64,000 bases of DNA from Thecamonas trahens ATCC 50062 (lineage: Eukaryota > Protista > Apusomonadida): assembly GCF_000142905.1 (NCBI RefSeq), contig NW_013657605.1, positions 1 to 64,000 on the forward strand. Reading direction: 5' to 3'. Below, piece after piece: positions 4,167 through 6,209 of the stretch (position 1 is the first letter of the stretch; each line of letters opens with the position of its first letter). A program made the position numbers and the translations under genes. The notes under the pieces are model-generated. The model made no database searches, was not told where the DNA came from, and worked only from the letters and a program-made list of their open reading frames with translations.

Positions 4167-6209
4167 TTACGATGGCACTGTGAGATAATATGCGCCTGCC
4201 GAGGTTGTTGGTGAGTCTGCGAGGGAGTCGCTCCCTACCGCCGAGGAGTAAAGCGCCACGATTCTGGCAATTGTGTCGCACGCATCGTCGTAGTCACGGC
4301 TGATGGCGTACCCGTGGCAAGCCATCTCGAGCAAGGCCCGTGTCGGAGAGTGGAGCTTGGCCAACGTGGTCAAATCCGATGATGCGGATTTCGGCACGAG
4401 TTTGGCCCCGAGCAAGAGCGAGACAAAGTGATGGCTGGGGAGCTCACTGAGCGGAAGTTCACAAGCGGGGTTGACTCGCAAGGTAGGTAGCGCCTGGTAG
4501 CTCGCGTATGCAGTGCGCGGCGGATCAAGCGCAAGTAGATCCTCGAGAACGGTAGCTTTGTCTCCACAAGCCGGTTTGTCATCGAGCGCCGCCGCCACGG
4601 TGGTCCAGGCAATCGGGCGGCACGCAGCGTTGGCGTAACAAGCGTAATAGTGCGCGCGCAGCTCCTCCAACGACACCGCCCGGTCGCGGTACGGTTCCTG
4701 GGCAACGATGCAGTGGATGACAACGCTGGTATCACGTGAGGAGTCCTTGACACGTGTTGGACGAAAGGGAAAGTTTTGGACGCCGCGATCGGCAGCGCGT
4801 GCAGAGGTAGGCAGCGCCGCGCCGGATGTCGAGCTGCTGCGGAGCGACGGGAGCGGCGCAAGTCCAAAGAGCTTGGCCGGATCGAGGTCCAAATCTGGGA
4901 AGCGAAGTCCAAGCTCGACGCCAATGACTCCATCCTTAAGACGGACGGCATGTATCGAGTTGGGCGTGATGGGCGTGTCCCCAGTGATGATAGACCACGC
5001 GTCGCGGTCGTCGATAGGCGTTCCGTTGATGCGGACCAAGTCACGAGCCTGCTCGACAAGATAGTATATGGCGTGGGCCTCGACAAACGCTGGGTCAAGG
5101 TCAATGTGCTGGAGCAAGTGGCACGAGTCAGCAATGGCAAAGATGCCGTCTGTCGGCACATGGCACCGCGAGAGAGTGATTGAGGTGAGGGCCGGGAGCC
5201 TCACCACGAGTGAGCTGAACAGCGCTGGATTAAGCGAGCAGAACTGAACGTTGAGCAGGCGGAGTTTGGGATTAGCATCGGCGATATGAGTGAAGCCAAC
5301 ATCGGTCACGCTTGTAAACGAGAGCGCGAGGCTGGTGAGCGAGCTGCAAGTTGCAGCGAGGTGTTGCGCGAACTGGTCGCCAACTGAGAGGTTATCGGCG
5401 ACCAACTTGTTGATGTTTGGATTCTGCGCGAGCACGTCTGCAATGGCCGTCCCCGAAAAGCTGCTGCAGCGGCGAACAGAAAGCGTCTTCAGTGCGGTGA
5501 CGTGGGTGAGGGCTTGAGTGATCCGCCTGCTGTTGAAGCCGCGGCTCTCGTCGAGACACAGCTCGGTGAGCGAGGGCGAGAGCATTTGATCAGGACTAAA
5601 GTCAGGCAGAGCGGCATGCCAGCTCAGCCCCGTGCTGGTGCAGGCACGCATGATCAGCGACGAGAGGTTGGTCAGATGGGCGAGCGGAAGGTAGCCGAAC
5701 AGCAGCGAGGTGCGCGAGAGATCAAGAGCGGTGAGCGAAGTCGGCAGGCTTCGCAGCAGCGACAGCGTCTCGTTGCCCATGTTAAGCTTGGAAATCGACG
5801 AGATGTTGAGCGAGGTGAGGCTGGGAAAGTGCGACGACGGCGGAGCGAGGAGGGCGAGCGAGGACGGACCGAGAGCGGTGCAGCCCTCGAGGACGAGGCT
5901 GGTCGTCCGCGGCATGAGCGAAGCGAGCTTGGCCAGCATGTGGCCATCAAAGGCGACACAGAACGAAAAGTCGACAGTGGTGACGGCCGACAGGTACGGG
6001 GCCTCGGCAAAGGTGCTCAGCCAGGCGTGATCGACGGCCGGGAAGGGGATGAGCATGTCGGCGACGGCGACGGTCTTCCACAGGTACGGGTCCGACACGG
6101 CGGCGTGCCAAGTCTTGCACACGCTGCGGGCGCGGATGCGGGTGAGGGTAGAGCAGTGCGAGAAGATGAGCAGCAGAATCTCGCGCGGAAGGTGCTGTGC
6201 GCTCGCCAT
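4167..6209 (-). CDS. F-box/LRR-repeat protein (FBXL-like) with a C-terminal GLEBS-like motif
   Basis: ATG at 6209 begins MASAQHLPREILLLIFSHC...RARSVCKTWHAAVSDPYLW (F-box). Cysteine-containing LRRs follow (LTSLNISS, LTALDLSRT, LTSLALSFTSVTDVGF, LQHIDLD). Confidence 0.9.
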   Translation of the reverse strand: MASAQHLPREILLLIFSHCSTLTRIRARSVCKTWHAAVSDPYLWKTVAVADMLIPFPAVDHAWLSTFAEAPYLSAVTTVDFSFCVAFDGHMLAKLASLMPRTTSLVLEGCTALGPSSLALLAPPSSHFPSLTSLNISSISKLNMGNETLSLLRSLPTSLTALDLSRTSLLFGYLPLAHLTNLSSLIMRACTSTGLSWHAALPDFSPDQMLSPSLTELCLDESRGFNSRRITQALTHVTALKTLSVRRCSSFSGTAIADVLAQNPNINKLVADNLSVGDQFAQHLAATCSSLTSLALSFTSVTDVGFTHIADANPKLRLLNVQFCSLNPALFSSLVVRLPALTSITLSRCHVPTDGIFAIADSCHLLQHIDLDPAFVEAHAIYYLVEQARDLVRINGTPIDDRDAWSIITGDTPITPNSIHAVRLKDGVIGVELGLRFPDLDLDPAKLFGLAPLPSLRSSSTSGAALPTSARAADRGVQNFPFRPTRVKDSSRDTSVVIHCIVAQEPYRDRAVSLEELRAHYYACYANAACRPIAWTTVAAALDDKPACGDKATVLEDLLALDPPRTAYASYQALPTLRVNPACELPLSELPSHHFVSLLLGAKLVPKSASSDLTTLAKLHSPTRALLEMACHGYAISRDYDDACDTIARIVALYSSAVGSDSLADSPTTSAGAYYLTVPS

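What the first reader, a model, noticed from the sequence alone, without database searches (positions are those of the whole stretch)
4644..4773. F-box/LRR protein carrying a Nup98-type GLEBS motif
Seen: after the LRRs the protein reads FPFRPTRVKDSSRDTSVVIHCIVAQEPYRDRAVSLEELRAHYY. Known: the Nup98/Nup116 Gle2-binding sequence (roughly F.P....D......HQCITAMKEYESKSLEELRLEDY) docks on the Rae1/Gle2 beta-propeller, and related GLEBS motifs in Bub1/BubR1 bind Bub3. Inference: an SCF substrate receptor that recruits or mimics a Rae1/Bub3 partner, tying cullin-1 ubiquitination to mRNA export or the spindle checkpoint. I know of no described F-box+LRR+GLEBS architecture.
Basis: partly seen in the sequence, partly recalled or inferred. 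Interest (0 to 1): 0.8.

Follow-up and report, generated by a model that had tools for sequence, protein, structure and literature searches.

The report
F-box LRR protein with GLEBS-like tail
A ubiquitin-ligase adaptor (F-box plus leucine-rich repeats) of the protist Thecamonas trahens has a conserved tail motif that looks like the peptide nuclear-pore protein Nup98 uses to grip the mRNA-export factor Rae1, which hints at a direct, untested link between SCF ubiquitination and Rae1.

Summary
The quoted peptide is encoded on the minus strand at window 4644-4772, as residues 480-522 of an intronless 680-aa ORF (window 4170-6209, minus strand). This is Thecamonas trahens AMSG_11290, with a clear F-box and FBXL-type LRRs.

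Against it:
- Pfam Nup98_GLEBS scores only 12 bits (E 0.23, cut-off 27).
- The one ortholog scores nothing on that model.

For it:
- A Tara Oceans ortholog, 37% identical overall, keeps the motif core at 64%, the same level as the F-box. It keeps 9 of the 11 residues that match Nup98, including the Glu-Glu pair.
- A profile of the two orthologs' motifs has three human Nup98 GLEBS chains among its only four PDB hits (E about 0.25).
- In the whole genome, that profile's best non-self hit (E 0.017) is the GLEBS of a second LRR protein, AMSG_00469, which does pass the Pfam cut-off.
- Shuffle tests against both bona fide GLEBS motifs of this genome give p < 0.001.
- Co-folding with T. trahens Rae1 gave weak support: 0.45 against a best control of 0.02.

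Best reading (about 0.5): an SCF receptor whose disordered tail docks on a Rae1/Bub3-family propeller. No such architecture is described in the searched literature.

The parts
4167..6209 (-). Full CDS of the F-box/LRR protein (680 aa plus stop). It matches AMSG_11290 over its first 547 residues.
   Evidence: ORF list and translation. 100% identity to P0001 over residues 1-547. Ortholog P0123 aligns from the start Met to the C-terminus.
6069..6197 (-). F-box, residues 5-47
   Evidence: PF12937 E 4.7e-13 and PF00646 E 2.7e-11, both above their cut-offs. Aligns to the SKP2 F-box. 64% identical to the ortholog.
5088..6059 (-). FBXL-type leucine-rich repeat domain, residues about 51-374
   Evidence: LRR_6 23.6 bits against a cut-off of 23.4. 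PDB FBXL2 6.6e-08, SKP2 and FBXL17. The AF2 model shows an alternating strand/helix solenoid with pLDDT about 70-88.
4875..5087 (-). Conserved post-LRR region, residues 375-445; function unknown
   Evidence: 49% identity to the ortholog. No Pfam family.
4779..4874 (-). Variable linker, residues 446-477
   Evidence: The ortholog carries a 24-residue insert here, largely acidic. pLDDT below 50.
4641..4778 (-). GLEBS-like motif, residues 478-523. N-arm: PFRPTRVKDS. C-arm: HCIVAQEPY, then SLEELR, then Y.
   Evidence: co-fold.
4662..4667 (-). Glu515-Glu516, the counterparts of Nup98 E201/E202
   Evidence: HMMER alignment to 3mmy_B. Invariant in the ortholog. Salt-bridge role taken from PMC3783196.
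4170..4640 (-). C-terminal tail, residues 524-680, weakly conserved
   Evidence: 23% identity, but alignable to a shared C-terminal ending.
4178..4567 (-). Stretch annotated as an intron in AMSG_11290 (GT..AG, 390 nt, in frame, no stop); probably coding
   Evidence: Comparison of P0001 with the ORF and the DNA at the junctions. The ortholog aligns through it.

Best explanation
The gene encodes an SCF substrate receptor. An N-terminal F-box is expected to bind Skp1, and an FBXL-type LRR solenoid follows it. The C-terminal half is predicted with low confidence and is probably disordered. It carries a short two-armed motif of the Nup98/Nup116 GLEBS type. I propose that this motif folds onto the top face of a Rae1/Bub3-family WD40 propeller, most likely Rae1. 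Its Glu515-Glu516 pair would form salt bridges with the two conserved Rae1 arginines, R145 and R192 in T. trahens. Nup98-type GLEBS motifs use the same Rae1 surface, so the F-box protein would engage Rae1 that is not held at the pore. It would then either present Rae1, or something bound to Rae1, to Cul1-Rbx1 for ubiquitination, or use Rae1 as a co-adaptor or stabiliser. What is shown here: the F-box and LRR identity, conservation of the motif, its sequence link to bona fide GLEBS motifs, and the presence of Rae1, Skp1 and cullins in the genome. What is inferred: actual Rae1 binding, which propeller is bound, and any ubiquitination outcome.
For: - F-box and LRRs are above their Pfam cut-offs, with FBXL2, SKP2 and FBXL17 as the best solved relatives.
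- PF21240 Nup98_GLEBS is the only Pfam family of 24,736 reported for the 71-aa piece.
- Ortholog P0123 (Tara Oceans, E 5e-77) is 37% identical overall. The motif core 499-523 is 64% identical, equal to the F-box, while the downstream tail is 23% and the upstream linker 38% with a large indel. Of the 11 residues that match Nup98, 9 are invariant and 2 are conservative changes (Fisher p 0.018 within the motif, 4.5e-4 against the C-terminal half).
- A profile of the two motifs finds only 4 PDB sequences at E<=10. Three of them are Nup98 GLEBS chains (E 0.25).
- The same profile searched over the whole genome in six frames finds itself, then the GLEBS of AMSG_00469 (E 0.017). That motif passes Pfam's cut-off at 28.6-33.4 bits, and its top PDB hits are all Nup98. 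The local run gave 15.1 bits against a best of 8.4 among 19,929 shuffled decoys.
- Smith-Waterman shuffle tests: against the FG-nucleoporin GLEBS, score 40 with 0/5000 shuffles reaching it, in an alignment spanning both arms; against AMSG_00469, 52 with 2/5000; ortholog against AMSG_00469, 63 with 0/5000.
- T. trahens has a clear Rae1 (E 2.6e-81 to human RAE1). It keeps both arginines that PMC3783196 reports as bridging Nup98 E201/E202.
- Co-fold of Rae1 with the 71-aa piece scored 0.45 (runs 0.45, 0.54, 0.43); the best of 3 controls scored 0.02. The verdict was 'weak support'. The mark was reached by 51 of 78 solved complexes and 2 of 108 mismatched pairs. However, scores of 0.60 or under were seen in only 5 of those 78, and in all 4 mismatches that passed (of 180). 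The runs agree in at least 63% of contacts, and the partner's pLDDT is at least 39.
- AF2 leaves residues 407-680 below pLDDT 50, which fits a docking motif in a disordered tail.
- Skp1 and at least four cullins are present in the genome.
Against: - The curated GLEBS HMM is far below threshold (12 against 27 bits), and the ortholog's piece gets no hit at all.
- The T. trahens piece searched alone against PDB found nothing.
- The motif has two extra residues between the Tyr and the SLEELR block compared with Nup98 and AMSG_00469.
- The co-fold pass is in the weak band. A like complex is solved (3MMY), so the score may reflect remembered likeness rather than binding.
- Only two lineages carry the gene, so conservation rests on a single comparison.
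- The AF2 model used a 4-sequence alignment, so its low confidence is not proof of disorder.
- No experiment was done.
Confidence: 0.5

Rival explanations
1. The block is a conserved lineage-specific motif with a different job, for example binding another partner, packing against the protein's own LRR surface, or acting as a degron. On this reading its likeness to GLEBS is coincidence or loose convergence, and it does not bind a Rae1/Bub3 propeller.
For: Pfam GLEBS scores 12 bits against a cut-off of 27, and there is no hit in the ortholog. The PDB profile hits have E about 0.25 and tie with an unrelated eIF2B-epsilon hit. Ortholog-conserved residues that GLEBS lacks, such as RAV before SLEE and RAH after it, suggest extra or different constraints. 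The co-fold passed only in the weak band, where passes are 'more often wrong than right unless the guess was likely beforehand'.
Against: The residues that match Nup98 are the ones preferentially conserved. The best genome-wide non-self hit of the motif profile is a bona fide GLEBS (E 0.017; decoys reach at most 8.4 bits). Both arms align to the organism's own FG-nucleoporin GLEBS (0/5000 shuffles). All three co-fold controls scored 0.02 or less.
Confidence: 0.3
2. The motif is a working GLEBS, but its partner is not Rae1. The partner would be the Bub3-like propeller (G000:C7) or the third, divergent Rae1-like propeller (G000:C24), which would tie the SCF receptor to the spindle checkpoint or to a lineage-specific complex.
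For: T. trahens encodes three Rae1/Bub3-family propellers. The co-fold test states that a pass does not tell which family member binds. GLEBS motifs of Bub1, BubR1 and BuGZ bind Bub3 (literature).
Against: The sequence likeness is to Nup98-type GLEBS; no Bub1 or Mad3 GLEBS chain appears among the PDB hits at E<=10. Only Rae1 was co-folded, so there is no data on the other propellers.
Confidence: 0.15
3. The motif is a decaying relic with no present function.
For: The HMM score is below threshold.
Against: The core is 64% identical between orthologs that are 23-38% identical in the flanking tail and linker.
Confidence: 0.05

Closest known systems
Nup98/Nup116 GLEBS (Pfam PF21240), the Rae1/Gle2-binding hairpin of GLFG nucleoporins (PDB 3MMY)
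   Same: It has the C-arm pattern C-[IL]-x-A-x3-Y, then S-L-E-E-[LI]-R, then Y, including the Glu-Glu pair. It has an N-arm PF[KR]xT..[IV][RK]DS like that of T. trahens' own FG-nucleoporin GLEBS. It sits in a region modelled with low confidence. It gets a weak co-fold pass with Rae1.
   Different: It is below the family threshold (12 against 27 bits). It has two extra residues between the Tyr and SLEELR. The host protein is an F-box/LRR protein, not an FG nucleoporin, and the motif lies C-terminal to a folded domain.
AMSG_00469 of the same genome (G000:C2): FBXL-type LRR protein with a Pfam-significant GLEBS
   Same: It is an LRR protein of the FBXL type that carries a Nup98-type motif. It is the best genome-wide match of the F-box protein's motif profile.
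   Different: Its GLEBS lies N-terminal to the LRRs. No F-box was detected. Outside the LRRs and the motif the two proteins are not alignable.
Bub1 / BubR1(Mad3) / BuGZ GLEBS motifs that bind Bub3
   Same: They belong to the same motif class and use paired glutamates on the top face of a Rae1/Bub3-family propeller.
   Different: No sequence match to the solved Bub1 or Mad3 GLEBS chains. The host protein is not a checkpoint protein.
FBXL proteins (SKP2, FBXL2, FBXL17)
   Same: F-box followed by a CC-type LRR solenoid; these are the best solved relatives.
   Different: None is described with a GLEBS motif. This protein adds a tail of about 300 residues beyond the LRRs.
PHR ligases (RPM-1/Highwire/MYCBP2) with FSN-1/FBXO45 and Skp1, which bind Rae1
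   Same: They set a precedent for an F-box-containing E3 assembly that binds Rae1 through a small conserved motif (PMC4806438).
   Different: There the Rae1-binding motif sits on the giant PHR scaffold, not on the F-box protein. No homology to that motif was tested here.

Membership tests
F-box proteins (PF00646 / PF12937) | F-box domain scoring above the curated cut-off | tested here: met
   PF12937 49.1 bits (cut-off 24.3) and PF00646 43.3 bits (cut-off 20.5) at residues 5-47. The ortholog matches too.
F-box proteins (PF00646 / PF12937) | Binds Skp1 and assembles with Cul1 | not testable with these tools
   Only the presence of Skp1 and cullin genes in the genome was checked.
FBXL subfamily (F-box + CC-type LRR) | LRR solenoid after the F-box, related to SKP2 and FBXL2 | tested here: met
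   LRR_6 23.6 bits against 23.4. PDB FBXL2 6.6e-08, SKP2 1.6e-06, FBXL17 1.3e-05. AF2 models a solenoid.
Nup98_GLEBS (PF21240) | HMM score at or above the gathering cut-off of 27 bits | tested here: not met
   12 bits, E 0.23 on the 71-aa piece. No hit for the ortholog's piece. The whole-genome scan with the family did not list it.
Nup98_GLEBS (PF21240) | Adjacent Glu-Glu pair (Nup98 E201/E202) that bridges two conserved Rae1 arginines | tested here: met
   E515-E516 align to the Nup98 EE pair and are invariant in the ortholog. Rae1 R145 and R192 correspond to human R172 and R216.
Nup98_GLEBS (PF21240) | Two-armed hairpin layout with an N-arm and a C-arm | tested here: inconclusive
   Both arms align to the T. 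trahens FG-nucleoporin GLEBS. AF2 draws a hairpin at 482-503 and a helix at 514-526, but at pLDDT below 50.
Nup98_GLEBS (PF21240) | Binds the top face of Rae1/Gle2 | tested here: inconclusive
   Co-fold score 0.45 against a best control of 0.02, verdict 'weak support', no interface reported.
Nup98_GLEBS (PF21240) | Embedded in an FG/GLFG nucleoporin | tested here: not met
   The host is an F-box/LRR protein without FG repeats.
Bub1/BubR1-type GLEBS | Sequence likeness to the solved Bub1 or Mad3 GLEBS peptides | tested here: not met
   No such chain among the PDB hits at E<=10. Binding to Bub3 was not tested.

The most novel reading that the evidence does not exclude
Apusomonads have moved the Rae1-docking GLEBS hairpin off the nuclear pore and onto FBXL-type LRR proteins, at least AMSG_11290 and AMSG_00469. 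This would create cullin-ligase receptors that compete with Nup98 for Rae1 and either ubiquitinate pore-free Rae1 or use it as a co-receptor. That would be a direct, motif-encoded SCF link to mRNA export that is not described in any organism.
Probability: 0.3. Interest if true: 0.75.

Novelty: new variant of a known kind. Interest (0 to 1): 0.6.

Why it matters
GLEBS motifs are known only in nucleoporins (Nup98/Nup116) and in checkpoint proteins (Bub1, BubR1/Mad3, BuGZ). A GLEBS-type motif on an SCF substrate receptor would be a new way to couple ubiquitination to Rae1 or Bub3. It occurs in a lineage close to the root of opisthokonts, and it is easy to test with a peptide pull-down and a two-residue charge swap. 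The same genome holds a second LRR protein whose GLEBS does pass the curated threshold, so the theme may not be a one-off. If the motif does not bind a propeller, the gene is an ordinary lineage-specific F-box/LRR protein.

Tried and rejected
- phmmer of the 71-aa piece against PDB found nothing.
- The ESM Atlas feature search of the piece gave no usable hit.
- The word search of the C-terminal region found only the protein itself.
- Two metagenome scans found no further ortholog. The single 'relative', L012, is an out-of-frame match over a bacterial fpg-like gene and was discarded.
- A reverse search of the genome with the AMSG_00469 GLEBS piece found only itself; the first-look filter passed one candidate.
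- The third genome hit of the motif profile (C16, E 4.9) has no GLEBS features.
- AMSG_00469 was checked for a cryptic F-box near 'LDDELLESFF'. Pfam found none on the 100-aa piece, and hhalign against the F-box protein alignment aligned only the LRRs.
- There is no synteny between the metagenome contig of the ortholog and the window.
- The Rae1 alignment (A1) was built for the co-fold, but the tool did not use it.
- The Bub3-like gene is split by an intron. I searched only its large exon by reference and did not join exons, so Bub3 could not be offered as a full chain.
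Full report
**Observation.** On the minus strand, window 4644-4772 encodes exactly the quoted 43 residues. They are residues 480-522 of a 680-aa intronless ORF, with the ATG at 6209 and the stop at 4167-4169. The longer mechanical ORF from 6512 begins at a GTG upstream. The ortholog described below starts at the same Met, so 6209 is taken as the start. The word search identifies the protein as Thecamonas trahens ATCC 50062 AMSG_11290.

**Gene model.** The public model is 550 aa. It equals the ORF for 547 residues, then splices out window 4178-4567 (GT..AG, 390 nt, in frame, no stop) and ends three codons later. 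The ortholog aligns through this stretch to a shared C-terminal ending. I therefore take the 680-aa ORF as the better model. The motif lies upstream of the disputed stretch and is present in both models.

**Domains.** Pfam gives F-box-like (49.1 bits) and F-box (43.3 bits) at residues 5-47, and LRR_6 just above its cut-off. The best solved relatives are FBXL2, SKP2 and FBXL17. AlphaFold2 on a four-sequence alignment models an LRR solenoid up to about residue 400 (pLDDT about 70-88). Residues 407-680 stay below pLDDT 50. Within that low-confidence part it draws a hairpin at 482-503 and a helix at 514-526. The genome encodes one Skp1 and at least four cullins, so SCF complexes can form.

**Is the tail motif a GLEBS? 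The curated test fails.** PF21240 Nup98_GLEBS is the only Pfam family reported for the 71-aa piece, but at 12 bits (E 0.23) against a cut-off of 27. The piece alone finds nothing in PDB.

**Other GLEBS motifs in the genome.** The same family searched across the whole genome finds two motifs above the cut-off.
- One lies in a Gly/Asn/FG-rich nucleoporin-like ORF on contig C54 (30.3 bits).
- The other, unexpectedly, lies in AMSG_00469 on contig C2. This is a 906-aa protein whose C-terminal half is an FBXL-type LRR domain (FBXL17 5.6e-11, FBXL2 2.1e-10). Its GLEBS scores 28.6-33.4 bits, and its top PDB hits are all Nup98 GLEBS chains.

So this organism already has a bona fide Nup98-type GLEBS on an LRR protein that is not a nucleoporin.

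**Ortholog.** An exhaustive HMMER search of 1.84 billion representatives with the whole protein gave one clear ortholog, P0123. It is 774 aa, with E 5e-77, and comes from a Tara Oceans marine metagenome contig of 60.5% GC. All other hits match the LRRs or the F-box only. The closest Rae1 homologue of T. trahens Rae1 (60% identity) comes from the same assembly, so the ortholog probably belongs to an uncultured relative.

**Conservation of the motif.** Overall identity to the ortholog is 37%. By region:

| Region | Identity to ortholog |
|---|---|
| F-box | 64% |
| LRRs | 35% |
| Post-LRR block | 49% |
| Linker (with a 24-residue, largely acidic indel) | 38% |
| Motif core, residues 499-523 | 64% |
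| Remaining tail | 23% |

Eleven T. trahens residues coincide with human Nup98 GLEBS in the HMMER alignment. Nine are invariant in the ortholog, and the other two are Ile/Leu swaps. Elsewhere in the motif 14 of 35 positions are invariant (Fisher p 0.018), and in the rest of the C-terminal half 62 of 224 (p 4.5e-4). This rests on one comparison.

**Sequence links to real GLEBS motifs.**
- A profile of the two orthologous motifs (A2) finds only four PDB sequences at E<=10. Three are Nup98 GLEBS chains (E 0.25, 14.8 bits). The fourth is an eIF2B-epsilon hit at the same level.
- Over the whole T. trahens genome in six frames, the profile finds itself, then the AMSG_00469 GLEBS (E 0.017, 20.3 bits), then noise (E 4.9).
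- Run locally, the profile scores 15.1 bits on AMSG_00469 (E 0.0055 at Z = 11,000). The best of 19,929 shuffled decoy proteins (12.2 million residues) scores 8.4 bits.
- Smith-Waterman comparisons of 71-aa pieces, each with 5,000 shuffles:

| Pair | Score | Shuffles reaching it |
|---|---|---|
| F-box motif vs FG-nucleoporin GLEBS (both arms; shared N-arm PF[KR]xT..[IV][RK]DS) | 40 | 0 |
| F-box motif vs AMSG_00469 | 52 | 2 |
| Ortholog vs AMSG_00469 | 63 | 0 |
| Ortholog vs FG-nucleoporin | 26 | 153 |

Taken together, I judge the block to be a divergent Nup98-type GLEBS by sequence (about 0.75). It carries a two-residue insertion between the Tyr and the SLEELR block, which explains much of the HMM penalty.

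**Partner.** A pattern search for the Rae1/Bub3 hallmark FKCHR found three family members.
- A single-exon 334-aa Rae1 on C10, with E 2.6e-81 to human RAE1 over its full length.
- A third, divergent Rae1-like ORF on C24.

PMC3783196 reports that Nup98 E201/E202 form salt bridges with Rae1 R172 and R216, and that the yeast equivalents are required for Nup116 binding. The alignment to 3MMY_A places T. trahens R145 and R192 at those positions. Both are nearly invariant among 113 Rae1 homologues.

**Co-fold.** Rae1 was co-folded with the 71-aa piece using ESMFold2. My alignment was not used. The scores were 0.45, 0.54 and 0.43 (median 0.45), and the best of three controls was 0.02. The verdict was 'weak support'. 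The mark was reached by 51 of 78 solved complexes and 2 of 108 mismatched pairs. However, scores of 0.60 or under were seen in only 5 of those 78, and in all 4 mismatches that passed (of 180). The runs agree in at least 63% of contacts, and the partner's pLDDT is at least 39. No interface was reported. The human Rae1-Nup98 complex is solved, so the pass may reflect recognised likeness rather than binding. It also cannot say which propeller of the family is bound.

**Mechanism proposed.**
- Shown: an F-box/LRR protein with a conserved GLEBS-like block in a low-confidence tail, and an organism that has Rae1 with an intact GLEBS-binding surface, plus Skp1 and cullins.
- Inferred: the block docks on the top face of Rae1, or of a paralogue, through the Glu-Glu/Arg bridges. 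This would exclude Nup98-type binding and bring Rae1 or its cargo to Cul1-Rbx1. Alternatively, Rae1 would serve as a co-receptor or stabiliser.
- Precedent: an F-box-containing E3 assembly that binds Rae1 through a small motif exists in animals (PHR/FSN-1/Skp1). There the motif is on the PHR scaffold (PMC4806438). In yeast, the GLEBS region of Mad3 is needed for its association with SCF-Cdc4 (PMC6095599).

**Novelty.** Full-text searches for GLEBS together with F-box, and for GLEBS motifs in general, returned only nucleoporin, Bub1/BubR1/Mad3 and BuGZ contexts. The architecture is restricted, as far as the databases show, to T. trahens and one marine relative. I class it as a new variant of a known kind. 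It is not filed as a member of PF21240, because the family's threshold was tested and not met. It is proposed to work like one.

**Limits.** Only one co-fold job was available, so there is no positive control and no test against the Bub3-like or third propeller. There is only one ortholog, and the AF2 alignment was shallow. None of this is experimental.

Noticed in passing
G000:C2:340844-343681 (L003:3848-6682, minus strand): AMSG_00469 is an FBXL-type LRR protein (FBXL17 5.6e-11) with a Nup98_GLEBS motif above Pfam's cut-off (28.6-33.4 bits). It has no detectable F-box and no homologue in the word search. This is a non-nucleoporin host for a bona fide GLEBS, and may be as interesting as the finding itself.
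   Followed up: partly
window 4178-4567 (minus strand): The intron annotated in AMSG_11290 is 390 nt, in frame and free of stops. The ortholog aligns through it to a shared C-terminal ending. The public 550-aa model is probably truncated, and the 680-aa ORF fits better.
   Followed up: partly
L007 (G000:C24:218271-221284): A third, divergent Rae1/Bub3-family WD40 ORF, with FKCHR and a GYDWHKG tail, exists besides the clear Rae1 (L005, C10) and the Bub3-like gene (L004, C7). It is a possible dedicated partner for the non-nucleoporin GLEBS proteins.
   Followed up: no
L002:880-1953 (G000:C54, minus strand): A Gly/Asn/FG-rich nucleoporin-like ORF carries a GLEBS that scores 30.3 bits as a 71-aa piece and 26.9 bits as a whole ORF, just under the 27-bit cut-off. 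Its acidic pair reads SALELR, with one Glu rather than two. It resembles human Nup98 less than AMSG_00469 does.
   Followed up: partly
L008 and L013 (ENA ERZ908037, Tara Oceans): The only ortholog of the F-box protein and the closest Rae1 homologue (60% identity) come from the same marine metagenome assembly. This suggests an uncultured relative of Thecamonas with intronless, 60% GC genes.
   Followed up: partly
The adjacency may be coincidental and I did not test it.
   Followed up: no
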